DNA of 63,847 bases, filler included, from Hyphochytrium catenoides (Eukaryota > Protista > Hyphochytriomycota), in NCBI GenBank assembly GCA_900088475.1. It is 6 parts of 6 records of this genome, joined end to end, with 100 filler letters (N's around TTAATTAATTAA, not from the genome) between each part and the next. Parts side by side here need not be neighbours in the genome. Positions count along the whole stretch, not along the records: positions 15,248 to 39,641 come from FLMG01004033.1; 5 more parts are not named here. One strand, written 5' to 3'. Below the pieces are notes generated by a model. That model was not told where the DNA came from and searched no databases. It saw only the letters and a list, made by a program, of their open reading frames with translations. Below, piece by piece: positions 4,154-38,613 of this stretch. The translations under genes were made by a program, and so were the position numbers. How positions within the stretch are numbered: position 1 is the stretch's first letter; each line of letters starts with the position of its first letter.

Positions 4154-4154
4154 T

Positions 4155-15247: not shown

Positions 15248-16473
15248 GTCAATATAGAAGAACTCGTTGACTGTCCTGCTAAGCCCTTTCCATGGAGCGA
15301 CACATAAATAAAGACAGATTATATCCTGGGTTAGGCTTGCTACTGCATTGACAATAGGTAACGTTCGAGCACATCCATGAATGGGCTTCTTACGTAGTTG
15401 AAGAGCAGTAAGAAGTTGTAGCCAGCGTTAGCAATATCCTTCAGCTTCTTAGAGAGATGAGAAGCAGGTAGAATACAATCACTCAGGAAGACATTGAGAT
15501 TGGCTGTTCTCATATACCGCGCTTGATACAAGTGTCACTTCCTGGGGCTCATCCAGGAGGGCTACATACCGAAGAGGTTGAACCGTATACTTGCTAGGTA
15601 GGCTTACAGAACCTTGAAGAGCGCAAACTGAGGGAAAGGCAGTTGATGAACAAGCTGCATCTTGCTTCCCCTGCTTTCCCCTACCTTTAATGGACTTATT
15701 GGTGGGGAAGGACAGTGAATGAAGAATAGTGCTTGGCAAGGTGAAAGGTCATTTCGATGAACTTCTTTGGTGATGATGACAGCCTTGGATCTTGAGTGTC
15801 GACTCGAGAGAGCCCACTATCGGGAATCAATGGATCAAAGAGCTCATGCCATTTCGGAATATTAAATGACTTATCATAGATGTTTACCATATCGTGGATT
15901 GCTTGAGCCCGGGAATGAAGGTCATAATCTATGGGATTCCACCTCTTTCCAGCTCTTTCGCCATAGTAATAATACAGGCACCTACCCCTTTATTCGACTT
16001 ATCACGATGTGTAGTAGTACGTCCAACGTTACATGAGTCTCGAGTATAGGCTAACCCGGGCCATGCAAAGTTAGAGGTAACATAGTTATGACTTCTCTGT
16101 CTCGGGTTAGGACCCGAGCCTTCTTGGAGACCAAAAGATCTTTTGGGTGTTGCGTTTGGTGATGGATCCTTCCCTTCCCTTCAGCGGGTCCAGCCTTTCC
16201 TGATGTTTCTTCTCCGCCAATTGCACTTCCATTGCCCTGCGACAAGATGCAGACTGCTACAGCTACTGCTACTTGTAGCTACTTGTAGCCTAGACCCTGT
16301 CTCTCCAGAAGTAACGTTGGGGGGCAGAAAGCACAAGCAACACGGAACCCGGAAGCTCTCTTCATCGTTTGTCATTCATCAAGTTTCAGCCTGCTTCAAT
16401 CATCAACATAACGCACTGCTGTAGGAGAAGATCCCTGCCCTTGACTCTACTTTTTGGCAAGACACCCAACACA

Positions 16474-17306
16474 ATGGCTCCTTCAATCAAGGTCTATTAT
16501 TTTGACATTGCGGGACGGGCTGAGCCAATTCGGCTTGCATTGGGTTGTGCTGGCCTCCCTTTCGAAGATGTTAGACTGAGCCGTGAGCAGTTTGGCGAGC
16601 TAAAAAAATGTAAGAGAGCTTGGACAGCCCATTCTGGTGAAAGGACTAACATCTTGCACTCGCTACAGCCGGAAAATTTCCAAATGGCCAGGTGCCCTTC
16701 GCTGAGATTGACGGCAAGCCACTTGCGCAGACCAACGCCATTTTGCGTTACGTGGGGAAGCTTGGGAACCTTTATCCTCAGGACGCTTGGGAAGCGGCAA
16801 AGGTTGACGAGGCGCTCTACTGGTGTGATGATGTAGGTCAGGCGATTGGCCCATCGTTCCGCGAGAGTGACCAGGAGAAGAAGGTGCGACGCGATCCTTG
16901 CCGATTATATAGTTCCCAATGGAGGACTGACTGCCAACCCTGCAACCTAGATGGCTCTGCGCAAAACCCTAGCTGAAGAAACCCTTCCCCTTTGGCTGGG
17001 TTACTTTGCCAAGCGCCTCGAGAGCAATGGTACCAACTTCGCAGCTGGCAATAATGTAAGATTCCAGGGGCTCTTCTTTCGTCAATATCTCTGTGTGAGT
17101 GACCTAACATAAGGTTGTCCTTGCTATAGTTGACTGTCGCAGATCTTGGTGCTTTCCAGATGCTGAACTGGATTAGCTCTGGCATCCTCGATGGCATTCC
17201 AACGACTATTCTCGACGGCTTTCCAGCTGTCAAGAGCTACCTCGAAAGAGTAAAGAACCACCCTGGAGTCAAGAAGTACTACGACTCCAAAACTCTGAAG
17301 AACTAG
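16474..17306 (+). CDS. GST: Glutathione S-transferase, sigma-like, 4 exons (16474-16609, 16669-16883, 16951-17055, 17130-17306)
   Basis: N-terminus MAPSIKVYYFDIAGRAEPIRLAL with the catalytic Tyr, G-site GQVPFAEIDGKPLAQTNAILRYVG, and N-capping box LTVADL. The GT-AG introns join in phase. Confidence 0.95.
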
Positions 17307-18061
17307 AGAGACAGGTAGCTATCGCATACAGCTGAAATAAGCTCTCTGCGTCTTTAGTTAACAATTAAATGTACGGCTAAGTTATTCGTCCTTAGTCTGT
17401 GTCCCTCTTCTACCTCTGTATCCTAGTTCTTTCCAGAAAGCTTGGTCGTAGCCGATTCTGGCATACAATTGGTGTCCAGTAAGCTACTCTCCTGACGTAA
17501 AGAATCATTAGTCTAGCACATCTACCGAAGCATCATTAGTAACTTTACAGCTGCGCTTTAGACTTTAGAACGTTATGAGTGGACGGTCCTCGGTGTAAAA
17601 AGCCTTCCGCAGCTAATACTATCTATCATTATGTGTTGTTCACTTTTCTCGCCTCAAAACAGAATCGGCAGCTCTTTAAATCTTGTTGGGACCGACTTGT
17701 TAAGTGAGATTGCTTGCCACCTGTGAAGCTAAGATAGCAAAGGTGGTCGCCCTGAGAGTGCTACGGACAAACGCTCATCCCCATTCTCAGCTAAAGCAAG
17801 AACGGGACTAGTATATGAAATGCCTACAGTGCTGAAGCTGGGACGCTTTGAATGATAGTTGTTAAACCTTCTTGCCAGAGAGACTGTAGGCAGACCAAGC
17901 TACTCGTAGAAGCGCTGACAAAGGATCATGGGCCATGACGACTGCGTCCGATCCTCACCCGTAGCTCTCAACCCCATCCATAAGTGTTCGATGTAGAACT
18001 CGATTGAAGGCAAGGATATTGCGTATTAAATAGAGACTAGCGCTCAAATACTACAGTTTAG

Positions 18062-21000
18062 CTAGAAACCTCCAAACATCTTCTGTGCCATTTTTTTCTC
18101 CTTCTCTTTCTGCTTTGCTTGAATTAGATCAAGTTTCTTTTGAAGGCGCTGGATCAACGGGTCTGAAGGAGCGATCTTGGCGGCCTTTTGAAGATCTTTA
18201 AGTGCCTGCAGGGTACAGTCTTAGGAGTGAAAATAGAGCCAATTGATTCCTATCACTCCGCAATGATCGCCCTCTTAAGTCCACATTATAAGACGGCTAG
18301 TTCCTATCAAATCACGCTATGGCTCACAACTGCTTAGTGGGAGCAAGCTCCATCGTTCAGATCTCCCTTCTCACCTCTGCATAGTTCTTCATGGCTTCCT
18401 CTGCCACAGCCTTCCTATAGAGCGCTTTAACCGACTCGGGATCAATCAATAAGGCAGATTTACAGTTCTCTGCAGCCTGACGCCAATTCTCGAGTTTCAA
18501 GTAGCACTGCGAGAGATTAAGGTACAAGGACAGCTTTGTCGTATCCACCTCCTTCTTTCCGTCGTCATCCAAGTCAAAGAACTTGGTGCAGTGATTGAGT
18601 GCCTTGATATACCTAGGAGAAAAAAAGTTCGGCGATTTGAGCAGAGCCAAGATATGCATGCGTCAACTCATAATAGGAAGCAGCGCCACGGAACTGCAGC
18701 CTCAGAGCCTCTATAAAAAGTCATGTTGGGCATCTCCATTTGCCCCATCCTGACTGACAAGGCAAGTGCACAGTCGTTATGGGCCGATCTCTCTTCCCCC
18801 GGCTTCCCGTGGTAAAGGAGGAATAGGTTGTCTGATGATGGCAAACTTTCACCTCGTCGCCACTCTTCTGACCCCTGTTGTTTTGCTCCTTCGCTCTCAC
18901 AAACCTAAGGTCCTGTTTTGCTCCAACTGAGCTTATGTTCTTCTTACCTGACAGCCGCCATTTCTAGGTTGCCACCTTTGAAGAGCTCGTTACCCTCGTC
19001 CTTATTCTTCATAACTAACCGCATGCGGTCCCCCTTCTTTAACTTGCGCCGGTCATGGTCGTCATCGTCTCCGCCTTCCGCCGCAGCTGACCATAGATAG
19101 GAGAGACGTTAGTTGGTGGTAAGACAACAAGAAGCACGGCCCGTCCAGGCTAGGCCACATCATCGCGCAACCCACTTTGTCCTCCACGCCTAGTCCGAAT
19201 AGATTGTCCTCTCCCTTCACCACAAGTGGAATCACCAACCAAATCCTCTCCCTCAGAAAGGGCTTACCTTCAGCCGCTGCAGCTGCTGCATCCTTGGCTA
19301 GTTCTTCCTCTATCTTCTTCCTCTCAGCCTCTACTGCTGCAAAATATTCAGGGCAAGCTTCGGTGATAGCGCCCTGTGATAATTAGAGCGGTTACCAAGC
19401 CAATCTCTCCAAGAGGTCTAATGGCCCAAAACTGATATGTGTAAGAATTTGGACCCAAAGTGACCGTACTTTTACGTCCTGTAGTTTACTGTCATATTCT
19501 GCAGCAGAACGATCATCAGCAGCCCACATCCAATCCTCAGTACCTAACACTAGAGAGTTCACGACATCGTCCTTCAAATGCTTCCTAGGGGACGGCGAGT
19601 GGTTCAGCTAGTGAAGTAGAGAGGATTGCGGAGGCGAGGCTCATGTCGCAGTTGTAGACAAAGCGCCTCAATGCTGAGAGACCAAGAAAGATCGAAGTCA
19701 GACTGAGTTAGAGGCCAATAAGCGCTTACTTGTGAGGTCCATTGAGCCCTCCCCGTAGCTCATAAAGGAAAGATTCTAAGCGGTTTCTCGCTGCCGTCGC
19801 CTCTCTCACTTCATGCTCCTGAATAAAAAAGGCATCGTCAACAACCTTCTCTTAGGTAAGACGTAGAGAACCACTCGTGGCTAACTGAGAGGAACGATTA
19901 GAGAGACTCCCATACAAAGATTTTAGACCGCCAAGAGAAGCTACAGGGCAGGTGAGGACCTGAGCCAGCATCTTTTCTTCGAAGCCGATGCACTTTTCAA
20001 TTACTTCTCCAGGCAGACTTCCAGCGTTTGCGACAACGTCAGCCTTCCACCTATGGATTAGAGGAATAGATGACACACACGGAAATTAGTGCAAAAATTT
20101 AGGAAACAGGACGGCGGACGGAATATCTGTAGCAAATGCAGGTCAGGTAGACATGGCCCGTATCTAAACCTAGCCACGTACTTTTCCAGGTCCACAACAA
20201 GCTCCCTGCCTGGGGCGGCTTCGCCATCGTTCTGCACTGAAACTCCATCTACCTCCTTTGAAACGGTCTGCAAGTGCGATGCGAGAATCGCAGCTCCTGT
20301 TGCCACGGAGTGCGACCCGTCCAACGTGTAGGCCAATCGGTCTCCGCCAATCTCAAAAATGAGAGACTTCACCCATGGGATACGAGTGCCACCTCCCTGT
20401 AGGCGCAGACATGAGGGCAAGGGTAGGTGAGAGAGTTGCGGATAAGTGGGGGCTAGGGCAGAAGCAACCAGTCTGCTTTAGCGTATTCATAAGAGTGGGG
20501 AGTATTAATAGCCTTTGAAAAGGAAAGGAAAACTGGAGAGCCACGAAGAGGCAGGAGGTGGTCCGTACTATTAGTTCAATTGCTCTACAGTCATTCAGGT
20601 TGACGCCGCTAGAGTAAATGACGGAAATCAGCAGCTCCTTCAGCTCTGCTCGCAGCTTCTCGCTTGCCTCCTCCACCTGTGCTCGGCTGATCTTCAGCCT
20701 CACATCGCGCTCTGATCCGTCCTCGCCGACCTTCATGGAAACAAATAAGCAGGTTTGAGGATAAGATTGTCTCTTGCGTCCTTTAGCTCTCTTAACCACG
20801 GTCGCAAGGCGACCTCCCCCTATCCAATAATGCCAGAAATACCGTCACTCTCTATCAGGTTCTCTCTCTGTGAAGTATTATCATTCCGTGCCTAGGAGAA
20901 TCTTGCATAGCTTACCACATGCTCGATATCAATGGGGGCTATGGCGACAGTACTTAGAACCTTCTTCGCCTTCTCGCATTCCTTTAGTATTCTAGCCCAC

Positions 21001-23339: not shown

Positions 23340-24833
23340 AGCCTTGAGGTCAGCCTTTCGGATATTTTTTGCTGCCTGAGGAGTGGCTTGGATCTGAAAC
23401 ATAGGGGAGAAAAGGGATTAGGTTACCGGAAGATAGAAAGTTAGGATCACCCCTTGAGACCCGACACACAGGATATAAGTGTCAGGGTACGTTAGAGAGC
23501 AGCTCTTGAGGAGGCCGGCTGCAGGAAGCAGAAGGACTTAGTGCGGGAAGGCCAAAGAGAGAGGCCGCACAGTGGGCGAGACAGAGTGCAAGTGTGAGAG
23601 AGATAGAGACAGCGTGGAGATCACAAGAGAGAGGAAAGCAGAGCAAAGATTGCCTAAAAGATGTCAAAGGCAAAGGGAGGTAGATGACATACAAAGTTTG
23701 CCAACTCAGCGAGCCCTTTGGAAATATCCTCGTCTGACTTGGCCTGCGAAAGGTTGAACGTGGCTTGGCGCCAGGAGGAGTTGTCCTCAGGGCCAAAGCG
23801 AGCTAAGAAGTTCATGGCAGGGAAGGCTGATAAGGCTCAAAGGCCAGCAATACGTGACCGAAAGGACTGTAGGGCGGGGCGATAGGGGGAGAGGCCTCAC
23901 AGTGCGAAGGTGGACTACGGGTGATCGAGGGTTCGTGGCTAGCGCTCTTCCTGCAGGCAGGAAGGGCACACCCTATCGCAAGGACTTCTTCGGCTTTCAA
24001 GAGCGGAAGCACAGAGCTGATGATCTCAACAGGGGGAGGAAAAACCCTTCAACAGCACCAGCGGACAGACCGAACGGCACGCTAAAGGGGCAGACTGTAA
24101 GGCCAAGAGAAGGAGAAAGAGAGCTGTGAAAGAGAGAGAGAGAGAGAACGAGAAAGAGAGAGAGAGAGGTCTTGGAATAGGAGATGGTCAGGGTCCTCTC
24201 CTCCTTCTAGAAGATGCCTTTCATGACTTCTTGATGGCTCTCAGGCCCTTCCCTCCTCCTCCCCGTAGATCGCCATCACTCCTCCCAAGGTCGAGCGGAT
24301 ATGGGTGACCTGGGTAACGGAGCTGGGTCGAGCTAAAGGACCTGGGTTGCCCACATAGCAGAACAGGACGGGGCAAAGCGGCTCTGTTATTGGTCTTCCA
24401 CACCACGGTCGTGCGTGGTGGTGGTGGTGGTAGGCCATCATCCACAGTATGATGTCTCTCTCTCTCTCTCTGTCTCTCTGTCTCTCTGTCTCTCTGTCTC
24501 TCTCTCTCTCTCCCTTCTCTCTCCATCTCTCTCTCTCTCTCTCTCTCTGTCTGTCTCTCTCTCACAGACTCCGACATTTTACCACGTCCTCACTCTCTCT
24601 CTTCCTCTTCCCCAACTCTTTGGTCTCTCTCCTCTCCCTCATAAATGTCACTATCTTGGCTCGTCTTATCTTGACTTTTTGCAAGTCGTCGCTACTCTTC
24701 AGCCCCACACAGCATCACCAGCTATTATTTAGGTTACATTAGGCGTTCTCGGTGACCTACCTAAGCAGAGGTCATAGTGATTGCCATCGACCAGCACGGA
24801 AGAGGAGACGAAGATCAAGCCCGAAGCAGAAGG

Positions 24834-25557: not shown

Positions 25558-25815
25558 TGCAGCTTAAATCTGAAGCCTGCTTCTTTTCTGAGAAACCTGA
25601 CCGTGGGTTAGCAAAGATAGAGAACAGAGCTGGCAAACTCCAAAACGGTGGCAACGACTGTTAGGACAGCAATAGACAGGCATCTGACATACCATTTAGA
25701 TACTATGAGACTCGTCAGCCAGCCTCTCAAAGCTCATAGATTATAATCTAGTGTACAACATCTTCAGNNNNNNNNNNNNNNNNNNNNNNNNCATAAATGG
25801 GTGGAATTCTAGCTC

Positions 25816-28800
25816 CTACATGCGCATGACAGGAACTAATGCGCTGGTTCTCACTGTTTCTCCGTGGTGGTACGGCTCGTTGTCGTCATAAAGGTATTGC
25901 TCGTGTCCATAGTCCGCTGGACTGTCGGGTAAATCTCTCTCTAGCTCTTCATAGTCCATCGGCACCACCCCAAAGCCTGAGTTTCGGGTATAGTGGCTGA
26001 CATAGGGCTGGGTCACACCATATTCAGAGGTGGAGAGGCCTTGATCTCCATCATCCTCATTATCGTCCGGATAGCGGAGGTGGCTGCAAAGAGGATCACG
26101 AGAAAGGCGGAATTAGGGATATTGGGCACGGTTCGTCAATATCATGACGGGTAGAAGAGAGGACACCCTAACAGCATCGGACCGCAATGACAGAACGATG
26201 AAGCACTCGCAGCCTATCCCAGATCCCTCTCTCAAGCTTAAGAAAGGGCCCCCTCGTAAGTCCAGGCATATAAAGATAGACAGTGAAAAGTGGTAGAAGC
26301 TGATAGTGGCACGAAGCTAATCAGCAGCTAGAGAACACTTCAAGAGTATACTCCTTTGCTCACCTCTTTCGTCTCCTTGTTCCTCTGTTCCTAGTGGGGA
26401 CAGGCACTGGGGAGTGCATTTGGGCCATTTGAGTGACAGGCGTGAGATTTCCAGGAGAAGGAGTATGCACCGGAGAAACGAGGTTTTGCGTCGATGAGGG
26501 CTGCAGAATGGGGCTATAATCTGAGCGCAGCCTGTGTGGAGTGAGGACGTCCATGTGGAAGTTGTCCCTTGCGATCTTGTCCATACTGCTTGGTTGCGCC
26601 CCGAGATTTCTTTCCTCAATCCTCTCTAGCCCTACCACACTGCTAACCGAGAGTCTGTCTCCTTTGTTACCGGCCCTAACCTTATCTCCACCAAGATAGT
26701 TATCCGCAAACTCGAGCGGATCAGGTGTAAGCGTTGCCCGGTCGCGGTCCATAGTCCGAAGAAGGTACATCAGGCGGCTAAAGCTATCCTCAAATCCAAA
26801 ACCCAACGAAAAGTGAACAAATCTCGATCGGGACAGTGTAAATATCTTGCCTGCAATTAGGATCAATTGGAAGGGAGAGAGTGAGCCGAAAGCATCAGTG
26901 GACACCGGCTCTCGCATGTGCAAGTGGATAATGTCAAACACAGAAGAGAAGTCATATAGGAAAGGGACTGGATATATAGGAAAGATACTGGACTTGCCTA
27001 AGCAACAAAGGACGGCTACAACTATTGGTAACCATCATGGTCCCAGGCATGAGAGGAAAAAGATGATCATTGTCTCGAGAATAAAAGTAATTGATAGATA
27101 TAGTGTGTCAACCAATAGAAAGGTAGATATAGCCGAGATCCACTCTCACCAGAATCAAGGTCAGGCTCGGAGAGTAAAATCGGTAGAATTGCCTTGCCCT
27201 TATCCTCAGCAAAGGAGAGTTGGTCGCTGAGGAAATCACTCTTGCCCGAGGAGTTGCTGAGGATAACCACAAAGAAAGTACATAGAGAGATTGCATCCTT
27301 GGCGTTGACGATTCTTTCCTTCAAACCCGCGCTGTGCATATCGTTGTCCACGTAGCATGGTACGCCAGCTCTTTGAAGGAATATTGCTACTTGACTGACG
27401 AACTCCAAGTGCTTGTCGCCATGAGAGATGAAGGCAAAATCTACGACAAAAAGAACATAACGTTAGCTGAAAGCCATGAAAGAAGTATGGGTAAGACAAA
27501 CGTTAACGAGTCGGCCGCACGAGGGGGCAAAATTGATATGCTCGACAGCAAGGAGTTCGCGGTTTGTGAGCGTACCTTTGCCCTTAACATCAGCGAGGGA
27601 GGAGAAGGCCTTGAGTTGCTGCGATATTCTGATGGCCTCTGGCAGCTTTCTCTTTCTCCTTCTCTTCGTTATGCGAGCGAGCTCGATCTCATCCCTGTGA
27701 AAATGCATGCTGTAAGTTTGCATTCTCTTCTCTACCGATCCTTCTCTATTTGGGATCCTTTTTCTAGTCGATGACCCGGCAATGTCTTCGGATGTCGAAA
27801 CTCACCTCAACCCATCAAGAAGCATTTTGAGCTGTCTGTCAAAGACCATCTCATCGTAGTTAAAGCGTACGTTCTTGACATTTGAGTAGTCGCCACTCTT
27901 GATACTGCTTTGAAACGGAATAATTTGGCGAGAATAGAGATATACCTAATAATAGCATCAACATTAGCTAAAGTGAATCACAAGCTAAGGAGAGACAAGA
28001 AAGAAGAAGCATGAGTTTGAAAAGTTGCTAAAATTAGAGGACTTGTGAGGAGTCGTCACGAAAATTTGAAGACTTTTTGTTCTTACTTGTAGTTCGTCTG
28101 TGATGTCAATGTCCTCACAAGTAATGGCGATGATGGGCTTCCTCTTCTGCTTAGCCAATGCCAACTCCTTAAGGCACCACTCGCTCTTCGGGTAGTCCTC
28201 ACTAATAATGGAAAGCACAACGGCTGCATCTGAGATGCCTCGAACTATTTCCTTCCTCCAAACAGCGCCCCCTCCAATGCCTGTTGCTCCCATAGTATCC
28301 ATCCAGGTCGTGATGTTATTTGCCTCAAGGGCTTCTCGGACCTGCGTACACATTAACAGAGATAAGCAACGCATTGACGCAAACAGTCAGTAGGTTAGAA
28401 GAGGTAAGTCGCAGCTGTGGCTCATCATTAAGAGTTGTAAGTGAAGTTATGTACCTTTGTCGCAAACTGTGCGTGGCTGTGAGTGTAGCTAATCATCACA
28501 TCTCTGCTGCCTGCCTCCTTTTTCACCGCAAAAGCGAGATCCGTGGACGTCGTGCAGTCAAGAGGCCTATGAAAAATGCTTAGATACCGCACTTTGCAGA
28601 AGTAGAGCGAGAAAGGACAGAGGTAGGCATACCCTACTACTGTACAGCTCCCAAATCACTGGGGAATCGAGATAACTCCATAAGAAAGAGAATCGTCACG
28701 GAGAAACCGCAGACGGTCCTCGTAGCAGACCAAGAACATAGAAGACGCTTGTACAGAGGCGGCTTACCTCAGTCCCTGAGCATTAACTACCGTCACACTT

Positions 28801-31800
28801 GCTCCACAGCGGATTAACGCTACAGCTGTTGCTCTATTCTCACACTTGAGCGCGACATGTAGCGCCGTATCCCCATTTTCTAGCCTGAAGGTATTGATGG
28901 CAATTGAACGAAGAGACAACCATTTTAACATTGAACAAAGGCCTGCCACTAGCGCCATAGATAATACCTGGCATTGATGTCTGCCCCTGCCTGGATGAGA
29001 CTGTGGATGACTTTCTCGCTAATCCCATCAAATTCCGAGGCAAAGAGAAGAGGAGTCATTTTGAATTTCCTGTACGGTGAACAAGAGAACAAAGACAAGA
29101 AGATAAGATTTCAGCAGCAGCTCTATCACGTGCGTAAATGGTATTAGTGCCATGTACCTGTTGTCGACTAGATTTGGGTCAGCACCACAGTCAAGTAAAA
29201 GGCGAGCGACATCAGCCCGGTTGCGGCGTACAGCCCAGTGAAGAGGTGTACGCCCTGTTCAAGGATTTGAAAGAGCTTGTCAGTTAAAAGAATCACCAGA
29301 GCAGACCAGCAGACCAGCATCAGAGGTAGGTTATCACAGCTGCACAGGGACACCGTAGAGCTATGAGAAACACCTGGGGTAGGAAGAAACATATTCCGGG
29401 AGTGCCGAGGTCCCCATACAAGTTCGGCAGAGGTTATGGTGCTTTGTGAAGTACTTCTTACCGGCAAGATCCTTGCTGTTGATCTCCGCTCCCGCCTGAA
29501 TCAGGAGCCTGCATGTCTCAAGATAGCCAGAGATGGCTGCCCAGTGCAATGGAGTGCGGCGGCAGAAGCCCATGTAGTGTTCACCCCTGGTGTTGGCATC
29601 AGCACCCTGCAGAGAGTTCACAGCGTAAGCGGCCTCGACTTAAATGTCAAAGAAATGCTGAAGTTAAGCATCGAAAAGGAACAAGCCAATAGTTGGAGCC
29701 AAACGTGCTTCTTGCAGCCCCCGATCTCCTTCAGTTATCGTACTGTGTCAGCCACTTCAACCGCTTAGGTTACCTTGCGCAGCAGCCTACTAACAGTAGC
29801 AATATCATTCACGGCGGCCGCTGAGTGAAGAGGTGTCAGCGAGATGTCTCCACCCCATTCCTCGAACAGGGTACAAAGATGGTAACGCTGTTTTCTATAG
29901 GCTTGCTCTAGCACAGTGACACTTAAGTATTGGTTTGGGTTCGGTACTAAGAGAATGTTGGCGCCAGCATGAAGCAGAGCTAGTGCAACCTATGAATAAC
30001 CGATGCGTCAGCAATTTCCAGGGAGATGCAACACAAGCAAAAGCGAAGAAAATAGGTGAGACGGAACCGCAAGCGCCAGTTAGACAATGGCAAATGGCCC
30101 GAACAACAAAAATAATTGTCTAAAGTGTCAACGGAGCAATGGCGATTGTGACGGTCGATGCCTCCTTTCAGTAGCACCCAAGATAAAGATTGAGTGAGAA
30201 GGTAAAGTACCTGCTTGTCATCCGCAAGGAAGAGAGGAGAAATGCGGCTTCCCACGTTGCTTGCCTTGGCTATGACATTCACAGATGCGCCGGCACCAAG
30301 AAGACACTTCACAGCGTTCAGGTGCTATTGGGACAACACATATGAGACCATAGCTACTAGTAAATTATAAAAATACGTTGAGGTAACGAAGAGTGAGAAG
30401 ATAGGAGAGAATGACCTACCCCTCGTGCCGTAGCCACATGTAGAGGTGTCACCAGACATGAGAAGAATGTAATAGTCCCCGAGCCAACGGTGGTTTGGTG
30501 GTTCTGTGCGTAGCGAGTGCCTGGGCCCATCCATCCAGTCAGAAAGACATACAAGGCGTTGATGCTGAAGCGCATTTTGTCAACCTGCCAAGAAGAATGA
30601 TATATTCAATACATACACTTCTTTTTTGAAGATGGATGTTAAGAGTATCCTGCCGGCACTCGGACATAAACCTCAGTAAACGACGAAGAGATCCACCCAC
30701 CTTGTCGAACATGTCAGCCTGAAATCCGAAGGAGAGCAATAGCTTCAGCATGTTGACGTTCCCCGTTGCCGCGGCCAGATGCATGGGGTTTTTGGTGGAC
30801 TTGGCAAAGAGGCCCAGCCTAGTTGGAACATCAAAGAAAGCAGATACAACCATCGTATTTAGCGCATTCAAGCCACCGTCAAACAAACGCAAGTAATAGT
30901 TTTACCAGAGGTGAGGGGGAGGATACAGCTCTTGGAGAAAGTGGATGCCAAACGTGTTTCGTGCTTCACAGAGCAACTTTCTTGTCTCCTTCTCGTCGTG
31001 GATACTGCAGACTCAGTATGAGAGTCTGTTCTCTATTTTCGCTAATTTGTCAAGGTACATGCTTCTGTGATCGCGCCTACCTGACACTTCGAAAGATCCT
31101 CTTTCTATACTTCTGGAGTAGCGCGCTTTTCTTGAATCTGCAGCACCATCCTCGTCCTCCTAGGAGATTGCTGGTCTGAGACATCTCATCAAAATTGCCT
31201 AGATGTGAACGCACGCGGCTGCAGGAAACTTGTTAGGAGCGCTTGAAGAGGAAGTAGACCAATTTGGAACCGAGGACTGACTGAAGCCTCAGCTTGAAGG
31301 TGTGGCTAGCTTGAGCCAATGAAAGTAGCTCCCGCAGAAGAAACTCAACATAGAGCATTTAGCGCAACAAAGAGGCTTACCTTCTATAGGAGCCAAAGAG
31401 CTTGATCTGCTGGTACAGCAAGAGGATCTTGATAATGCCGAGTGCAATGATGGCGCCTTCTACAGCTATCTTATATAGTCGATTCGTCTCTTTGAGTGCA
31501 CTTTCACTGCATTCTGTCGTTACAGAGTCTTTCAGCTGAATCAGCACCTGGGCAATCCAAGCAATCTGCAGAGAGGAGCTGTTAGAACAAGTGCTTCTGT
31601 TCCACACAACCCCTATCCCTAAGACAAGGTTGCCCAAAGAAGAGTAGGTTTAGGACCCCCTGCTTGTGACCTCCTTACCATGTAAAGGACTAGCACCACA
31701 ACGGCAAGCTCAACAATGCTTAGCCACAGAGAACGCTTCAGCTTTACAGATTTCGACTGCTTGCGATAGAGTCTAGAAGAGGGAGTACATCCTATTAGTA

Positions 31801-32670
31801 TAAGGGCAGATTCTACCTCTCCGTTGCTCTCCCGCACACGTAACGATGTGATTTCCGCGCTATGAGTATCAATGAATGCCTTTAGACCAGCGTTACTCTG
31901 TCACCCTCTTACCTGAACGGTCTGAAGCCGGTCGCTGACAGGCCGACTATGAAGCAGTACGGCACGGTGTAGTTGAGGAACAAAGAGTACTTGACGAAGG
32001 GAATACACACATCATTCTGGTTCAAGAGGCCTAACTTCGAGATCTGAGCGTCCAAGACTGTCCAGGCTAAAGCCAGGGCTGTCCCATCCACCACCAGGAT
32101 GGCTAGTGTGGTCTGTAAGAGATACTTTGCTACGTAGGAGTTCCTAAAGTTGTTGCCAATGGTGGATGGAGCTGTGATTCGCTTTGTGAGTGCAGAGTTC
32201 TTTCTGAGGTAAGAAGATCGTTTTCGCTCAGGTTCTTGTTGAGCATGACTTACCTGTCGGCTTGATGTTAATGGGCAGGGCTTCAGGTAGAGCGTGATTC
32301 TCCGGCACCCCTCTGGGCGTACCCACCATTCGGATCTCATCATCCCGTGGTGTATGTCCTTCAGAGTAATCTGTCACCGTGGTCTTGCTGTTGTTTAGCT
32401 TAGGCTTGCCCAAGTGCCCATTCTCTAGGTCAAACTCAACTAGCCTTTTGCCCCTCAGCCCGTCAGCTGCCGAATAGTTTGAGGTGTATACGCCAGCATT
32501 GACAGCGCCATCTCGTGCACCTGATAGTATATACATTGGTAAGTCTTATTATTACCCGTTCTTATTGATATCACGATGCACCACGTACCTCCTCTAGCAG
32601 GAAGTGCAGCCGGTATGGCTACGGCGGGATTAGTAACGATTCCGTCTTCCTGGAGCCAATCTTCGCCCAT
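25816..32670 (-). CDS. Multi-pass membrane (4 TM) - ankyrin repeats - tandem TIR-TIR protein (~20 exons)
   Basis: The spliced translation gives four hydrophobic helices (~32130-31400), then about 8 ankyrin repeats (NPMHLAAATGN, TPLHVATARGH, SPLFLAD, TPLHSAAAVND, TPLHWAAISGY, TPLHWAVRRNR, TPLLFASEF, TALHVALKCEN). TIR1 reads DVMISYTHSH..TWMD..GGGAVWRKEIVRGISDAAVVLSIISEDYPKSEWCLKELALA. TIR2 reads FAFISHGDKH..CYVD..AISLCTFFVVILSNSSGKSDFLSDQLSFAEDKGKAILPI. A disordered tail follows. Confidence 0.85.
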
Positions 32671-34700
32671 GGAATACCTACGGCCAGCATCTTTAGCCTC
32701 CGATCTCTCTCGTGCTGCATGTCGCTACATATAACTCACCCGGGAGCAAATTTGACGCCTACACCTGGCCCAGCTCCTCCATTCCAGGCCATCTTAAGTT
32801 AGCTGAGGCAGGTCGCCTGCACCGTTAGTTAGATTTACCATCAACTAACCATAATGAAGAGCTATTTCTGCCTTTCTTGGAGCAACTGCATACTGAGGAC
32901 CCTCTACCAGCGTTCTACTAAAGCTCAACAGGACAAATAGCCATGCGAGAGCTGCTCGAACAACTGATGATTCATCAGCAAGAATGGCTTTTTGGTCTCT
33001 CAGACTCGATGTAGCAGGGCGGCGGTGAGCAGCGGCGCTCTTGAAGAACAACAGCTCGATTCCAAGCTTCGCCTGCGTCTGCCTATTGCGTTTGCTTATC
33101 CTGGCCGTCCTGTCCTCCCCTACGAGTTCCGCCCTGATCGTGGGCCAGGCGCTGGAACGAGCACACAGTTCTGCTCTAAAAGCTTGCTAGTGACAGACAG
33201 AGTGATAAGGGTCCACACGCACTCACTGTCTGCAGAGCCGCAGAGTGTGATCCGTCAACACCGAGCTCTCTGTTGCAAGAAATGCAATGCGATACGGAGG
33301 ACGGGATCCGCTCTACAGAGGCAGAGAGCTTACTATACGGCGAGTCTCTTCGGTTTAGATGATGGGGGTGGCGATGGACCCATGGGGTGTAGGACGTCTC
33401 TCCCCCTGTTCGGCCTCTCTTCTATCATATCCATCGTTGCTGACGTTGCCTTGCTCCCTGGGGACTGAGACCCCAAATAACCTCACTTCTTGTTCGTTTC
33501 TTCCTGAATTCGTGGGACAAGGATTAGTGATTCGATGGTTCTATGTAATTCTGATTCTGGATATAAGAAACGCCTTTCTCAGGGTCGGACATCCTTACGA
33601 TTCCTAAAAGGATGACATAGATTTCAAGCGAAACTTTCCGTCTTGCTGATTGCCGTTACAACCTTCCCTTGGCGCTTCTTATCTACAGCATGGGCTGCTG
33701 AGCGATGATCATGATGATGTGATCATCGGTGGTGAGTGGCTGCTGTCAGGGTTCCTTCCTTCCTGCTTCCGGGTCATTGACCGTCAATGGAATGGGAGAG
33801 GGATGAAGTATAGTGTAAAAGGCAGGCGAGACGAAGGAACTTAAGGCAATCAAGCGGCAACGGGAAGATTCTGGTTGCTGACAGGAGTACGTATCCCCCG
33901 CAACAACGGCGTGGACAGCGCTACTGCTCATCAGCGGGGCACATCACTGAGCCTCGTTCTTCTACAGGGCGGCGGCCGAGAAGAAAATGGCGCCATCCTC
34001 CCCGATAACTTAATATGGTCATCATCATGAGCTGGAGTAGCTTTATCAATTAGTTGGAATGCATTAATGATACGTCGTCCTTATTCGGGCCCTCTTTCTC
34101 TCACTTGTCGCGTTTTGTGTGCATGCTTTCCCGGCTCCTACTACTTTCTGTAACAAGAAGCACCGCCGGTTATATAACATGCAACAAAAGCACTGATCCT
34201 CCCGTCGCGGCGGCGTTGTTGCAAGGAGGAGGGTAGAGGATTCATGAGGTTCTGCTTCGTTCTTGTCAAGAAGTAAATATGGCCGGCCGCTTGAGGAAGG
34301 AATACTGTTCATCATTCACTTTCATCGTTTCTTCGTCAGCAACCTCCTCCTCCTCCGGAGAACTAAATGGAAACAACAGGACAATCGCTTCCCCAAAAAA
34401 CTCAAGACCTCATTCCTTGCCGTTAGCGGAAACAGATGTCGTTTCAAGTTCTTCTTCCACAACTTGTCCATCCAGCTTCCTTACACCATCGTCCATTGCG
34501 CTCTAGAGTGATTGAGATCAGCACCACCACGCTGGTGTCTGAAGGAAGGATCTTTCGCTGCCACCGGTATTGGGGCGGCAATATTGCCGCAGTCCCATCT
34601 GCCATCATCGTCCTGACAAACCATCGTTCTGACTAATGTCAGTGTAGCTCTATGGCCACATCAATAATCACCTGTCTGTTAAGATCACGTAGAAAAAACT

Positions 34701-36180
34701 ATGAGGCGGCAGAGGCCAATCACCTTCGGGCTACTACTCTCGAGCTTGCTTGCCATCACCTCGGGCAAGGCTATTAATGCGGCAGTCAGAGTTTCTCCTG
34801 ACTTCGTCTACAAAGGTAACACATCGCGCTGTCCTTTTAACTTCAGTAGACTAACTGTTCCTACTGCCTCATAAACGACCATCTTTCTATGACAGCATCT
34901 CCAAACTCCGCCGCAATCATCAGTGAGTCGAGCTGTGAATGGAGTTCTGATATCCTGGAAGATGCGTCGTCAGGCTTTATCCTTTCCTGTCCTAATGACA
35001 AAGTTTTAGTTGGCCTCCGCTGCCATGGGGCTGACTGTGCTCAGTTTGATGCTCGATGTTGCCACGGGAAAGGCACCTTTCATGGAGGTGATGGGTCGCC
35101 ACTGGCGCCAGGTAGAGATCTCAAAGCCAAATGTGGAAAGCAAGTCCTATCCTACCATCGAGAGCAGCCCACAGATCCCCCGAACGAGACGAAAAGCACC
35201 CGTTACCTCGCTGTCCCTGCTCAGCTCAGTGATATTCCCAAGACCGCCATGTTGAACCAGGTCGCAACGGGTTTAATATGCAAAGACGAATCATGCACTT
35301 CACTCTCTCTGCAAGGTAGACCCTTGATGTGCGGTTCGTCAGAGTATCTGATACCCATCTCCGAGGAGAACTGCGGCTGGACCGAGGTGCTGGATAGGAC
35401 ACAGAGTGGCTCCATAACATGCTCCCCTAATCAAGTGCTGACCGGTCTTCGGTGTCTATCTGCTCAATGTTTAGAGCTAGCGATTAGGTGCTGTCCCTTC
35501 GGAGATGGTGAGGCGTCAAGAGACTGTGTCACTTCCCGCCTTTATAAAGTTCTTGGGAGAGGATTCATTTTGATTCTAACTCACTTATGACGTTGCACAG
35601 TCTGTCCTAGTGGACACTTTGGGGACAACATGATCTGCCAGCGTTGTCCGCCAGGTCAATACGGAGATAGCGCGGGCCTGACATCAGAGCGATGCTCGAA
35701 TCCATGCCCAAGAGGCACTTACTCGGAGAAGTATGGGCTTCGCAGCGCATCACAGTGCGAAAAGTGCCCCTTAGGGTCATACAACGATGTCCTGGGTGCT
35801 TCAAATGTGTTAGCATGCAAGCCTTGTCCTCCAGGTGATTGCACTGAATGCTCCAAATGAAAGACCAGTTGCTCACTCTCTCTTGCTTCCTCGCTGCTGC
35901 AGGTCGCTTTGGCAGCAGGAGAGGGCTCACTAGCAGAGAGTGCTCTGGAGCTTGTCCCCTCGGCACCTTTAGCAATAAAGCGGGTATCTCTAGCAAAGAG
36001 GGATGCAAGCTTTGTCCCCCTGGGACATACAATGATCGTACAGGTAGCACAGAATGCAAGCTGTGTCCAAAAGGCACGTACAATAGCGATTTTGGGGCGG
36101 CCTCACGGACCGCTTGCGAAGCTTGCCCAAGAAACTATTATCAATTTGGATGCATCAGCAACCTGGCCAGCATGAGCTGA
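34701..36180 (+). CDS. Secreted cysteine-rich protein: N-terminal internally repeated Cys domain + GCC2/GCC3 (ephrin-receptor-like) repeats, 4 exons
   Basis: Signal peptide MRRQRPITFGLLLSSLLAITSG at 34701. Repeats SCEW...SCPNDKVLVGLRC...C..RCC and NCGW...TCSPNQVLTGLRC...C..RCC. Then many CxxCPxGxY/F repeats (CQRCPPGQY, CEKCPLGSY, CKLCPPGTY, CKLCPKGTY). Confidence 0.85.
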
Positions 36181-37350: not shown

Positions 37351-38613
37351 ATGGTTGGACTGATGGGGGAATATCTGAAAGACAAGGTTCTATCCATACA
37401 ATCTGAGGGAGCAGACACTGCAGACTCTGCGGATGCCGGCGCGTTATCGGACCTCTTTGGGGCCGAACTGGAGGAAAATGAAGAGGGACAGGAAGCCGTG
37501 GTGACGGTACAGACAAGCTATGTTAGGAAGCCAGCAGACGCGCATCCGCAAGTTTTACAGCTGGAACTTATAAGCTCAAAGCACAGTCTCTGGGTAAGAA
37601 GGGCTTGGGATGCTTTGTAAGGCCGTCCGCTTCCTAGTCTTATAAGCGCTTCATGTATGTAGGGCCATCTTATCTGGAATGCAGCCATCCTTTTAGCAGG
37701 TAGACGGCGACCAGTGTGCCTGTTTGACTCCGCTGATGATCTGTCATGTCTTGCATCCCTGCCGCTTATCGACAGAGCGCTTTGATACTGGAGCGCTCTC
37801 TTGCAAGGGAGCTACGGTTCTAGAGCTTGGAGCAGGGGCTGGTTTGCCGGGGCTGGTCTGTGCACTGGTAGGCATGGATGGAATGCCGTATTGCAGAGTT
37901 TTATAGCTTTCGCCAAAGACTCGATTTTATATCTGTGACTGACAATGGGTTCTTTCATGGCACACCTTGTAGAAAGGAGCTGGGACTGTGGTCATCTCAG
38001 ACTATGCCACAGAAACTGATCAAGCTCTAATTGAAGTCATCAATCGCAACATTGAGTCTGTGAAGCCTTACCTTACAACAGGTAGAGTCTCTGCAACCCT
38101 TAGCACTTTGGCATGCGTAGCACCAGTACTATTTGCTCATGGTTCCGACACGCAGACTGCAAGCTAGTGGGTGCCGGACATGTTTGGGGGCAAAGTGTGT
38201 CACCTCTTTTGCAGCAGTTGCCACCGCCTCCGGATATGAGCGAAGAAGCCACGTCGCCTGGCTTTGACCTTATTATTTTAGCAGATTTGCTCTTCAACCG
38301 ATCCCAGCACCAACAGCTGTTACGGTCCTGCCATGATGCACTAAGTCCAAGTGGAAGAATCCTCGTAACATTCTCCCACCATGACCCTGGTGAGCTTGAC
38401 TCAGAGGGATGCAAGTTCTATGGCGCTAACTGCTCTATCACCCCTACAGAGAAGGCAGAGCAGGACTTGAAGTTCTTTTCGCTAGCTGCCAAGGAACCCT
38501 TTAACTTCACAGTGCAGAAGCTTGAACAGGTGCAAATGGTAGACCACTTCATTATGAACGACGGGCTAGACGATGCAAGGGGAGTTGTCTACTTCTATGA
38601 ACTTCGCAAGTGA
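37351..38613 (+). CDS. Seven-beta-strand protein methyltransferase, EFM7/NNT1-like (Methyltransf_16 family), 6 exons
   Basis: Motifs HSLW|GHLIWNAAILLA, motif I VLELGAGAGLPGL, post-I VVISDY, GHVWG, motif II FDLIILADLLFN, and ILVTFSHHDP..DLKFF. Confidence 0.9.

What the first reader, a model, noticed from the sequence alone, without database searches (positions are those of the whole stretch)
25816..32670. 4TM-ankyrin-TIR-TIR: candidate membrane-anchored immune or cell-death receptor in a protist
Seen: manual splicing of about 20 exons gives one reading frame with four TM helices, short loops each containing a Cys (NDVC, TTEC), about 8 ankyrin repeats, two TIR domains and a disordered tail. Established: TIR domains with the catalytic Glu cleave NAD+ or make signal nucleotides in SARM1, plant TNLs and bacterial Thoeris. 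TLR/IL-1R receptors are single-pass with LRR or Ig ectodomains, so this architecture differs from all of these. Inference: with four TMs, both ANK and TIR would be cytosolic, giving a membrane-tethered sensor-enzyme, possibly oligomerising or pore-like, for antiviral or antiparasite defence. Homologues may already exist as hypothetical proteins in oomycetes.
Basis: partly seen in the sequence, partly recalled or inferred. Interest (0 to 1): 0.82.

Follow-up and report, generated by a model that had tools for sequence, protein, structure and literature searches.

The report
Membrane-anchored ankyrin–TIR enzyme gene
This is a real, intact 23-exon gene for a four-pass membrane protein carrying ankyrin repeats, one catalytic-type TIR domain and one degenerate TIR domain; it belongs to a family found in every sequenced oomycete whose TIR domain makes the messenger cADPR in a test system, and whose role in the cell is still unknown.

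Summary
On the minus strand (32670→25816), 23 exons joined by 22 GT-AG introns give one 1,239-aa frame. It contains an N-terminal tail, four TM helices with a Cys in each outer loop (NDVC, TTEC), eight ankyrin repeats, two TIR domains and a tail.

The spliced protein aligns end to end (38.7% identity over 1,062 columns, E = 0) with more than 100 oomycete proteins of the same architecture. In run contigs, all 12 listed indels fall in predicted introns, and 8 of 9 exonic substitutions are synonymous.

The 4TM module is family-specific, with an invariant Asn and two invariant Cys, no Pfam family and no convincing fold match. TIR1 keeps the catalytic Glu in 65 of 65 homologues. TIR2 never has it (Gln in 58 of 65, and in the window).

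A 2026 preprint shows that TIR1 of a Phytophthora paralogue makes cADPR in E. coli. So "membrane-tethered TIR enzyme with cytosolic ANK and TIR" is well supported.

"Immune or cell-death receptor" is untested. The stable, low-copy, strongly conserved orthologues point at least as much to core second-messenger signalling. No RNA run was listed, so the splice chain rests on homology and variation. This is a new, divergent member of a catalogued but uncharacterised family.

The parts
25816..32670 (-). Whole gene: 23 exons, 22 GT-AG introns, 1,239-aa product (model3)
   Evidence: model. (end-to-end homology). (splice consensus; variants).
32589..32670 (-). Exon 1: ATG at 32670, N-terminal low-complexity region
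   Evidence: Not conserved in homologues, so the start codon is provisional.
32250..32520 (-). Exon 2: N-terminal disordered region. The donor is uncertain (32250, or the consensus donor at 32254 with an acceptor giving an exon start at 32171).
   Evidence: One synonymous variant at 32333.
31913..32203 (-). Exon 3: NSYV motif (Asn139, 32142-32140), TM1 (32121-32053), outer loop 1 with Cys184 (32007-32005), TM2 (32004-31933)
   Evidence: (P0007/P0012 tblastn hits)
31679..31772 (-). Exon 4: basic cytosolic loop (8 K/R) and first part of TM3, including the near-invariant Glu236 (31711-31709)
31381..31565 (-). Exon 5: end of TM3, outer loop 2 with Cys265 (31511-31509), TM4 (31478-31413), start of the juxtamembrane helix
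   Evidence: Synonymous variant at 31464.
31081..31218 (-). Exon 6: juxtamembrane/linker segment (HLGNFDE corresponds to the family's LGAFKE motif)
   Evidence: Synonymous variant at 31167.
30906..31004 (-). Exon 7: linker before the ankyrin repeats
   Evidence: (tblastn of P0012, P0022, P0044)
30701..30818 (-). Exon 8: ANK repeat 1 (NPMHLAAATGNVNMLKLLL)
   Evidence: Synonymous variant at 30791.
30420..30584 (-). Exon 9: insert plus start of ANK repeat 2
   Evidence: P0001, P0012 and P0070 align here at 28-35% identity
30211..30324 (-). Exon 10: ANK repeats 2-3
29774..29989 (-). Exon 11: ANK repeats 3-4
29462..29606 (-). Exon 12: ANK repeat 5
   Evidence: (Ank E 1.7e-9)
29158..29254 (-). Exon 13: ANK repeat 6
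   Evidence: Ank E 6.5e-12. Synonymous variant at 29196.
28968..29069 (-). Exon 14: ANK repeat 7
28768..28884 (-). Exon 15: ANK repeat 8
   Evidence: Synonymous variant at 28866.
28455..28566 (-). Exon 16: conserved RPLDCTTST motif and start of TIR1 (RDVMISYTHSH)
   Evidence: (62-79% identity to homologues)
28087..28341 (-). Exon 17: core of TIR1, including the GIGGG loop and SEWCLKEL. Catalytic-type Glu841 is at 28167-28165.
   Evidence: TIR_2 E 1.2e-13. (Glu aligns with that of RPS4, L6 and Cat1). (Glu in 65/65).
27806..27945 (-). Exon 18: C-terminal extension of TIR1 (VYLYSRQIIPF...LLDGLR)
   Evidence: (start moved to 27945 to recover a conserved 16-aa block). Synonymous variant at 27826.
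27576..27694 (-). Exon 19: long helix/linker between the two TIR domains
27150..27440 (-). Exon 20: TIR2, a degenerate TIR with Gln1027 (27222-27220) at the catalytic position
   Evidence: TIR_2 E 1.7e-10. (Gln aligns with the Glu of Cat1 and RPP1). (never Glu in 65 homologues).
26549..26850 (-). Exon 21: conserved post-TIR2 motif KIFTLSRSRFVHF..GF..SF, then a poorly conserved tail. It may instead read through to a stop near 26361.
   Evidence: (acceptor moved to 26850 to match homologues)
26364..26390 (-). Exon 22 (27 nt): doubtful, weak donor on the preceding intron
25816..26055 (-). Exon 23: acidic, Tyr-rich tail and TAG stop. Provisional.
   Evidence: No homology support.
25768..25791 (.). 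Assembly gap of 24 N, 25 nt downstream of the predicted stop codon (interrupts the 3' UTR)

Best explanation
The locus encodes one polytopic membrane protein of about 1,240 aa.

Domain order:
- a disordered N-terminus;
- a family-specific four-helix TM bundle, N-in/C-in, with one invariant Cys in each extracytosolic loop (probably a disulfide);
- a basic juxtamembrane helix;
- eight ankyrin repeats;
- TIR1, which has the catalytic Glu;
- a long helix;
- TIR2, a pseudo-enzyme with Gln in place of the Glu;
- a short conserved C-terminal motif and a tail.

It is a divergent, intron-rich orthologue of a family present in all sequenced oomycetes.

Most likely mechanism: the protein is held at a membrane by the 4TM module. 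TIR1 cleaves or cyclises NAD+ on the cytosolic face, giving cADPR and possibly ADPR. This activity requires TIR self-association, which the ankyrin solenoid and the non-catalytic TIR2 restrain or template. The TM module and its outer loops set the location and possibly gate activity.

What is shown: the gene structure, architecture, homology, conserved residues and TIR fold. Shown elsewhere for a paralogue's isolated TIR1: cADPR production that depends on the Glu. Inferred: topology, the disulfide, regulation by ANK and TIR2, and the biological role. I rate conserved second-messenger or NAD+ signalling as somewhat more likely than pathogen sensing.
For: - Pfam finds TIR_2 twice plus Ank repeats in the exon pieces.
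- The curated 23-exon model has a consensus splice signal.
- Collinear full-length homology to oomycete proteins, E = 0.
- In Achlya a single uninterrupted ORF of 499 aa holds the N-terminus, the 4TM module and the first ANK repeats.
- In an 83-sequence alignment of the 4TM domain, Asn, Cys and Cys are invariant and are present in the window.
- The AF2 model of the 4TM domain has pLDDT 87.6 and pTM 0.80.
- Positive-inside charge counts support the N-in/C-in topology.
- The TIR1 Glu is present in 65/65 homologues. The TIR2 position is never Glu: Gln in 58/65. The window residues align with the catalytic Glu of RPS4, L6, Cat1 and RPP1.
- The AF2 TIR1-TIR2 model (pLDDT 82) matches RPP1, RUN1, RPV1, SARM1 and Hydra TIR structures.
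- Indels are confined to introns, and 8 of 9 exonic substitutions are synonymous.
- TIR1 is the most conserved part: 93%, 73% and 64% identity at three depths.
- Preprint 10.64898/2026.04.20.719644, Table S4 row 122: a family TIR1 is active and makes cADPR. Exact 25-mer matches place it in clade D, whose members carry the 4TM domain.
Against: - No transcript evidence for this locus. No RNA run was listed.
- The N-terminal exon boundary and the last two exons are uncertain.
- The assayed TIR is from a paralogous clade and was tested as an isolated domain in E. coli. The window's TIR1 is about 60% identical to clade D TIR1.
- Several near-invariant TM-domain residues differ in the window protein: the Pro of LGLPASG is Ser, the Cys of the CE pair is Val, and the juxtamembrane His is Arg.
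- The relative arrangement of TIR1 and TIR2 is not confidently modelled (pTM 0.54).
- Nothing here shows what activates the protein.
Confidence: 0.7

Rival explanations
1. Immune or cell-death receptor. The 4TM module or the ANK repeats sense a virus, parasite or damage signal. TIR1 then depletes NAD+ or makes a signal that triggers defence or cell suicide, as in SARM1, plant TIR proteins and Thoeris.
For: - TIR domains with the catalytic Glu are immune or cell-death enzymes in bacteria, plants and animals (established knowledge; PMC9153377).
- The nearest bacterial profiles are defence TIRs: ThsB, SAVED-TIR, PDC-S66. The nearest solved sequence is CRISPR-associated Cat1.
- A paralogue's TIR makes cADPR, and the preprint's text lists the Phytophthora TIR among those shown in the figure panels that include the Thoeris type VII growth-arrest assay. 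The supplementary-table row I read shows only 'active' and 'cADPR'.
- Pseudofungal genomes carry giant-virus insertions, so antiviral pressure exists (PMC5795050).
Against: - The family shows three ancient clades with stable orthologues in Saprolegniales, Pythiales, Albuginales and Peronosporales, including reduced obligate biotrophs.
- No lineage-specific expansion or hypervariable sensor region was seen. All regions are at least 55% identical, and the outer loops 71-75%, within Peronosporales.
- No known immune partner domains, and no clustering with defence-like genes in the window or around the Achlya gene.
Confidence: 0.25
2. Channel or 'chanzyme'. Oligomers of the 4TM module form a pore whose gating is coupled to the TIR product or to TIR assembly. 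This is the idea behind the database label 'TRP Ca2+ channel family'.
For: - There are near-invariant polar residues inside the TM helices: a Glu at the start of TM3, a His and Pro in TM2, and an invariant pre-TM1 Asn.
- VIA-align lists 4TM oligomeric membrane proteins among its best matches: tetraspanin PRPH2 (Z 10.5), a de novo Ca channel (9.2), LRRC8 (8.1), connexins (7.1-7.4) and Otop (7.2).
- TIR domains work as oligomers (established knowledge).
Against: - Those Z-scores are below the tool's own noise level of about 13 for helical bundles.
- Foldseek against PDB, AFDB and the ESM Atlas gives nothing significant.
- No ion-channel Pfam family, and no six-TM or pore-loop layout.
- The TRP label evidently comes from the ankyrin repeats alone.
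Confidence: 0.1
3. Non-enzymatic scaffold. The TIR domains act only as protein-protein adaptors, as in MyD88 or TLR signalling, and the ANK repeats recruit partners to a membrane.
For: TIR2 lacks the catalytic residue throughout the family. Many animal TIRs are adaptors (established knowledge).
Against: The TIR1 Glu is invariant in 65/65, and TIR1 is the most conserved region. A family TIR1 is catalytically active, and the preprint states that activity of the cADPR-producing TIRs depended on the catalytic Glu.
Confidence: 0.07
4. The chain is an artefact. Two or three neighbouring genes (TM protein, ANK protein, TIR protein) have been wrongly spliced together, or the gene is a pseudogene.
For: No RNA evidence is available. 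Two weak donors exist, at introns 2 and 21.
Against: - A single alignment runs through all the junctions against more than 100 single-gene homologues.
- The Achlya ORF joins TM and ANK without any intron.
- All reading frames are open, and the polymorphism pattern indicates purifying selection on exons from the N-terminal tail to TIR2.
- DNA contigs of the other runs show no joints.
Confidence: 0.04

Closest known systems
Oomycete 4TM-ankyrin-TIR-TIR proteins. Examples: Pythium insidiosum GLE04463.1, Achlya hypogyna OQR96094.1, Albugo candida A0A024G7A5, and the Phytophthora protein D0N4Z2 assayed in bioRxiv 10.64898/2026.04.20.719644.
   Same: Same domain order and collinear homology over about 1,000 residues. 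Same invariant Asn/Cys/Cys in the TM module. Same SEWCLKEL Glu in TIR1 and a non-Glu residue in TIR2. Same post-TIR2 motif.
   Different: Only 36-41% identical overall. It branches outside the main clade that unites Saprolegniales and Peronosporales sequences (SH-aLRT 81, long branch). It has 22 introns, against about 2 inferred in Achlya. Outer loop 1 is much shorter. Several near-invariant TM residues are replaced.
SARM1 (ARM-SAM-SAM-TIR NADase of animals)
   Same: A helical-repeat regulatory domain lies upstream of a Glu-dependent TIR. It is conserved as stable orthologues rather than an expanding receptor family. Membrane association holds in a loose sense only. The SARM1 TIR is among the structural matches.
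   Different: No ARM or SAM domains (Pfam finds only Ank and TIR). It is an integral 4TM protein. It has a second, catalytically dead TIR. The oligomerisation device is unknown.
Plant TIR domains (RPS4, L6, RUN1, RPV1, RPP1) and bacterial TIR enzymes (Cat1, Thoeris ThsB)
   Same: TIR_2-type fold. The S-x-W-C-x-x-E-L helix carries the catalytic Glu, as shown by sequence alignment and structure matches. PADLOC gives ThsB and SAVED-TIR hits.
   Different: No NB-ARC/LRR, no CARF/SAVED sensor, no ThsA-like partner seen. It is fused to a membrane module and ANK repeats.
Toll-like and IL-1 receptors
   Same: A membrane protein with a cytosolic TIR.
   Different: Four TM helices instead of one. No LRR or Ig ectodomain: the outer loops are 16-40 residues. 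The TIR is of the enzymatic TIR_2 type. There are tandem TIRs.
TRP channels (the label several database entries carry)
   Same: Ankyrin repeats plus TM helices.
   Different: The TM helices are N-terminal to the ANK repeats and number four. There is no S5-pore-S6 unit and no ion-channel Pfam hit.
Tetraspanin, MARVEL and MS4A four-helix membrane bundles
   Same: An up-down four-TM bundle with cytosolic termini and Cys-bearing outer loops. These are the best VIA-align matches, Z 7.7-10.5.
   Different: No sequence or profile similarity. Z-scores are below the helical-bundle noise level. No large EC2 domain or CCG motif. A long conserved juxtamembrane helix is present.

Membership tests
Oomycete 4TM-ANK-TIR-TIR family | Collinear full-length homology (TM module, then ANK, TIR1, TIR2) | tested here: met
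   One BLASTP HSP covers q109-1138 / s100-1133 at 38.7% identity, E 0. One phmmer domain covers q139-1033.
Oomycete 4TM-ANK-TIR-TIR family | 4TM module with an invariant pre-TM1 Asn and one invariant Cys in each outer loop | tested here: met
   Alignment A1: N13, C75 and C162 are invariant in 83 sequences. The window has Asn139, Cys184 and Cys265.
Oomycete 4TM-ANK-TIR-TIR family | Near-invariant TM-module residues (LP in TM2, CE at TM3, juxtamembrane R-x-R-x-H) | tested here: inconclusive
   The window keeps the Glu, one Arg, the Phe and the Gly. It has Ser for Pro, Val for Cys and Arg for His. This fits a divergent outgroup member.
Oomycete 4TM-ANK-TIR-TIR family | TIR1 with Glu in SEWCLKEL, and TIR2 without Glu (D-Q-L-x-F-A-E) | tested here: met
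   Glu841 and Gln1027 in the window. The family shows 65/65 Glu in TIR1 and 0/65 Glu in TIR2.
Catalytic (NAD+-processing) TIR domains | TIR fold | tested here: met
   Pfam TIR_2 scores 52 and 41.9 bits against a cut-off of 28. The AF2 model of the homologous module matches solved TIR structures.
Catalytic (NAD+-processing) TIR domains | Catalytic Glu on the alpha-C helix | tested here: met
   TIR1 Glu841 aligns with the Glu of RPS4, L6 and Cat1. TIR2 does not meet this: Gln aligns with the Glu of Cat1 and RPP1.
Catalytic (NAD+-processing) TIR domains | Measured NAD+ cleavage or cADPR production | not testable with these tools
   Reported for TIR1 of a paralogous Phytophthora protein in E. coli (preprint Table S4). 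Not measured for this protein.
Toll-like / IL-1 receptors | Single TM helix with an LRR or Ig ectodomain | tested here: not met
   Four TM segments, outer loops of 16-20 aa, and no LRR or Ig Pfam hit.
SARM1 | ARM repeat plus tandem SAM domains upstream of the TIR | tested here: not met
   Pfam finds only Ank-type and TIR-type families in seven full-length homologues, and only Ank and TIR in the window pieces.
TRP cation channels | Six TM helices with a pore loop between S5 and S6, C-terminal to the ANK repeats | tested here: not met
   Four TM helices N-terminal to the ANK repeats. No ion-channel family even at E of 1 or less.
Tetraspanin / MARVEL / MS4A | Family-level sequence or fold match | tested here: inconclusive
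   No Pfam hit. Foldseek is not significant. VIA-align Z of 7.7-10.5 is below the stated helical-bundle noise of about 13.

The most novel reading that the evidence does not exclude
The 4TM module is not a passive anchor but a sensing or conducting unit. On this reading the family is a transmembrane receptor-cyclase (or chanzyme). An extracellular or intramembrane cue is relayed through the conserved juxtamembrane helix and ANK solenoid to assemble TIR1 against the dead TIR2. This produces cADPR as a second messenger, for example for Ca2+ control in zoosporic pseudofungi. It would be a membrane TIR signalling system that arose independently of animal TLRs and predates the oomycete radiation.
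Probability: 0.2. Interest if true: 0.8.

Novelty: new member of a known kind. Interest (0 to 1): 0.45.

Why it matters
Oomycetes include major crop and fish pathogens. This is their main conserved TIR protein family, yet no member has a known cellular role.

This analysis adds three points that I did not find discussed in the main text of the papers I read:
- The family has a conserved, family-specific four-helix membrane module with a probable extracytosolic disulfide.
- Its second TIR never has the catalytic Glu in any of the 65 homologues examined. Table S2 of the 2026 preprint lists Gln (and one Thr) at this position for individual oomycete proteins, so the residue itself is already tabulated.
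- A divergent, intron-rich orthologue sits outside the main clade of the family, probably in a hyphochytrid. That would date the family to before the oomycete radiation.

Together with the reported cADPR production by a paralogue's TIR1, this gives a concrete, testable model of a membrane-tethered TIR enzyme in a lineage where TIR biology is unexplored. If the role is immune, it would extend TIR immunity to pseudofungi. If it is Ca2+ or NAD+ signalling, it would be a non-immune use of an enzymatic TIR. Either result is informative, and the protein could be a lineage-specific target.

Tried and rejected
- **RNA evidence.** Two run searches were made. None was listed for RNA. Only DNA contigs could be laid, so splicing could not be observed directly.
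- **First gene model.** The automatic dynamic-programming model missed four ANK exons and chose wrong acceptors for exons 18 and 21. I corrected these by hand against homologues.
- **The window's own annotated protein.** It was not among the listed database results, so no independent gene model could be compared.
- **Kinship of the 4TM module.** Pfam at E of 1 or less gave only sub-threshold, inconsistent hits. PADLOC gave none. Foldseek PDB gave a best E of 0.22. AFDB clusters gave TM below 0.5, with generic MARVEL and PalI bundles. The ESM Atlas gave nothing by shape or by features. VIA-align wide gave generic 4TM bundles below noise. A profile search for short stand-alone copies found only partial oomycete gene models.
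- **TRP-channel annotation.** Rejected.
- **Second paralogue in this piece.** None found by tblastn.
- **Functional link to neighbours.** The neighbours are an HSP70-family fragment, Ephrin_rec_like Cys-rich repeats and a methyltransferase-like ORF. There is no evident connection.
- **Organism identity.** Not established. Hyphochytrium catenoides fits the tree position, the intron-rich structure, diploidy, and the pattern of two 2011 runs from one sample plus one 2017 run (PMC5795050). This is circumstantial.
- **Spliced protein as a query.** The spliced protein has no reference id, so it could not be given to the structure, Pfam or large database tools. Homologues and exon pieces were used instead.

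Full report
**Location and strand.** The feature is a gene on the minus strand. Stop-to-stop translation of 25.5-33.0 kb shows many short open segments with ankyrin-like and TIR-like sequence in all three minus-strand frames. Pfam confirms TIR_2 in pieces 28386-27988 (E 1.2e-13) and 27462-27070 (E 1.7e-10). It also confirms Ank, Ank_2 and Ank_3 in five pieces between 30901 and 28767.

**Gene model.** A simple dynamic-programming chain was refined by reading the sequence and by comparison with homologues. The result is 23 exons and 22 GT-AG introns of 46-308 nt, giving a 1,239-aa frame.
- The donor sites show a real consensus: A at -2 in 17/22, G at -1 in 19/22, A at +3 in 16/22 and G at +5 in 14/22.
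- Exons have 50.8% GC and introns 45.4%.
- 17 of the 22 introns carry an in-frame stop on read-through.
- Weak points are the intron-2 donor and the last two introns. For intron 2, a perfect CAG|GTAAGT lies 4 nt upstream and would pair with an acceptor giving an exon start at 32171, changing 11 residues of the disordered N-terminus. At the 3' end, exon 21 could instead read through to a stop near 26361.

**Is it one gene?** No RNA run was listed, so I used three other lines of evidence.

1. *Homology.* A search of 1.84 billion representatives with the TIR1 exon gave 1,312 hits. The best were 45-59% identical oomycete proteins of about 1,000-1,600 aa from Pythium, Achlya, Lagenidium, Thraustotheca, Phytophthora and Plasmopara.
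   - Laid on the window by tblastn, they are collinear from the TM exon through ANK and TIR1 to TIR2.
   - The spliced protein gives one BLASTP HSP with P. insidiosum GLE04463.1 (q109-1138, s100-1133, 38.7% identity, E 0).
   - It gives one phmmer domain (q139-1033) with dozens of homologues.
2. *An intron-poor homologue.* In Achlya hypogyna the gene spans 3,303 nt for 1,058 aa. Its first uninterrupted ORF (499 aa) contains the N-terminus, the four TM helices and the first ANK repeats. The TM-ANK junction therefore exists without any splicing inference.
3. *Variation in public DNA runs.* Contigs from three public DNA runs carrying the same species label show two haplotypes and no joints.
   - All 12 listed indels fall in predicted introns (P about 8e-5).
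   - Only 9 of 40 listed substitutions are exonic, although exons make up 54% of the stretch (P about 4e-5).
   - Eight of those nine are synonymous third-position changes, spread over exons 2, 5, 6, 8, 13, 15, 18 and 20.
   - Only the best-supported variants were shown by the tool, so these counts are a sample.

**The membrane module.** Hydropathy finds three of the four TM segments in the window protein above threshold, and typically three or four in the homologues, always just upstream of the ANK repeats. The window's TM2 is less hydrophobic and is placed by the family alignment.

An 83-sequence alignment of this region has three invariant columns: an Asn before TM1, a Cys in the TM1-TM2 loop and a Cys in the TM3-TM4 loop. 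Near-invariant features are an LP in TM2, a CE pair at the start of TM3, and a juxtamembrane F-x-R-x-R-x-H...G motif. The window keeps the Asn (NSYV), both Cys (NDVC, TTEC), the Glu, and part of the juxtamembrane motif.

Charge counts follow the positive-inside rule. K+R is 6, 8 and 4 on the N-terminal side, the TM2-3 loop and the post-TM4 segment. It is 1 and 3 in the two Cys-bearing loops. The termini, ANK and TIR domains are therefore predicted to be cytosolic, and the two invariant Cys extracytosolic, where a disulfide is plausible.

AlphaFold2 on the P. insidiosum module with the family alignment gives a confident four-helix bundle plus a juxtamembrane helix (pLDDT 87.6, pTM 0.80). No relative was found:
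- Pfam and PADLOC give nothing.
- Foldseek against PDB, AFDB clusters and the ESM Atlas gives nothing significant.
- VIA-align ranks generic 4TM proteins first (tetraspanin PRPH2, synaptophysin, uroplakin, MS4A, connexins) at Z 7.7-10.5. That is below the tool's stated noise for helical bundles.
- A profile search for short proteins found only truncated oomycete models of the same family.

**Ankyrin repeats and TIR domains.** Eight ANK repeats can be read in exons 8-15.

TIR1 (exons 16-18) is the most conserved part of the protein. It is 93% identical within Peronosporales, 73% between Peronosporomycetes and Saprolegniales, and 64% between the window and three homologues. Its SEWCLKEL helix carries a Glu that is invariant in 65 of 65 homologues. 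That Glu aligns with the catalytic Glu of RPS4, L6 and Cat1.

TIR2 (exon 20) is a genuine TIR_2 domain. At the same position it has Gln in the window and in 58 of 65 homologues, and Thr, Leu, Ile, Ala or Val in the rest. It never has Glu.

A model of the TIR1-helix-TIR2 module (pLDDT 82, pTM 0.54) matches the solved TIR domains of RPP1, RUN1, RPV1, SARM1 and Hydra TRR-2. The mutual orientation of the two TIRs is not reliable.

**What is known about the family.** Database names are 'hypothetical', 'TIR domain-containing', 'ankyrin-like' or 'TRP Ca2+ channel family'. The last name is not justified: there are four TM helices N-terminal to the ANK repeats and no channel family hit.

Lapin et al. 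2022 (PMC9153377) mention 'uncharacterized ankyrin repeat-TIR proteins' in oomycetes.

The preprint 10.64898/2026.04.20.719644 reports that a Phytophthora TIR produces cADPR in E. coli.
- Its Table S4 row 122 gives the assayed domain: residues 816-972 of a 1,179-aa protein, catalytic residue 892, marked 'active' and 'cADPR yes'.
- A 25-residue stretch of that sequence occurs exactly in clade D members of this family, which carry the 4TM module.
- Table S2 lists the other TIR of oomycete Ank proteins with GLN at the catalytic position. This agrees with my alignment.

So the enzymatic capacity of TIR1 is shown for a paralogue's isolated domain. I found no discussion of the membrane module or of a cellular role in what I read.

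**Evolution and source organism.** A maximum-likelihood tree of 42 sequences shows three deep clades, each holding both Saprolegniales and Peronosporales or Pythiales members. The clades therefore predate the oomycete crown. The window protein is sister to the largest clade (SH-aLRT 81; the clade itself 100), on a long branch.

Every listed hit with an organism name is an oomycete; many others come unnamed from metagenomic or run assemblies. The window's 22 introns contrast with about 2 inferred in Achlya.

These points, the diploid variation, and the run pattern (two 2011 runs from one sample plus one 2017 run, with about 100 Mb of contigs) fit Hyphochytrium catenoides as described in PMC5795050. 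I could not verify the organism, so this is a guess.

**Interpretation.** The best-supported mechanism is a membrane-tethered TIR enzyme. TIR1 turns over NAD+ (cADPR and possibly ADPR) on the cytosolic face, with activity depending on TIR self-association. The ANK solenoid and the dead TIR2 are the obvious candidates for restraining or templating that association. The TM module localises the enzyme and may transmit a signal.

The immune or cell-death reading is possible by analogy with SARM1, plant TIRs and Thoeris, but nothing here shows it. The family's stable orthology, its retention in obligate biotrophs and its uniform conservation fit a core signalling role at least as well. A channel function is speculative.

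**Verdict.** The gene is a new, divergent member of a catalogued but functionally uncharacterised family.

Noticed in passing
window 26900-32700 (variants in runs X1-X3): Two haplotypes are present in the DNA runs, with roughly 1-2% differences concentrated in introns. This fits a diploid, heterozygous organism. Unitigs break at polymorphic sites.
   Followed up: partly
window 27791-27941: A 2025 soil metagenome run (X4) holds a 151-nt contig identical to this stretch (exon 18 and its flank). The organism or a very close relative therefore occurs in soil.
   Followed up: no
window 25768-25791: A 24-N assembly gap lies 25 nt downstream of the predicted stop codon. The 3' UTR, and possibly the true 3' end, is interrupted.
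   Followed up: no
window 20058-20420 (-), with further ORF pieces up to 23402 (-): A fragment of an HSP70-family gene (Pfam HSP70, E 5e-5). It probably belongs to a multi-exon divergent Hsp70/Hsp110-like gene on the minus strand.
   Followed up: no
window 35848-36180 (+), and the ORF at 34889-35590 (+): Cys-rich Ephrin_rec_like / TNFR-like repeat (E 1e-12), next to a second Cys-rich ORF without a Pfam hit. Possibly a secreted or surface protein gene.
   Followed up: no
window 38113-38613 (+): Terminal exon of a methyltransferase-like protein. The Pfam Methyltransf_12 and Methyltransf_2 hits are weak and below cut-off.
   Followed up: no
window 24221-24577 (-): An ORF with a long Arg/Glu dipeptide-like low-complexity run (ERQTEREREREMEREGRERERQRDRETERQRERER). 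It may be a simple repeat rather than a gene.
   Followed up: no
Homologues P0001 (Lagenidium, 2,664 aa), P0006 (2,513 aa), P0015 (Thraustotheca, 1,678 aa): Some family members are much longer. P0001 contains two complete 4TM-ANK-TIR units in tandem. P0015 has extra C-terminal TM segments, and the preprint's table lists a GT-B glycosyltransferase domain for that protein. These are either real fusions or merged gene models.
   Followed up: partly
Homologue P0204 (Hyaloperonospora arabidopsidis): One family member is named 'RxLR effector candidate' in UniRef. With four TM helices and cytosolic domains this label looks spurious.
   Followed up: no
L001 (Achlya hypogyna contig, locus coordinates 1-19303): The Achlya orthologue is flanked by two dynein heavy-chain genes, a signal-peptide-peptidase-like gene, a cytidylyltransferase gene and a CCDC61-like gene. 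There is no defence-like neighbourhood.
   Followed up: no
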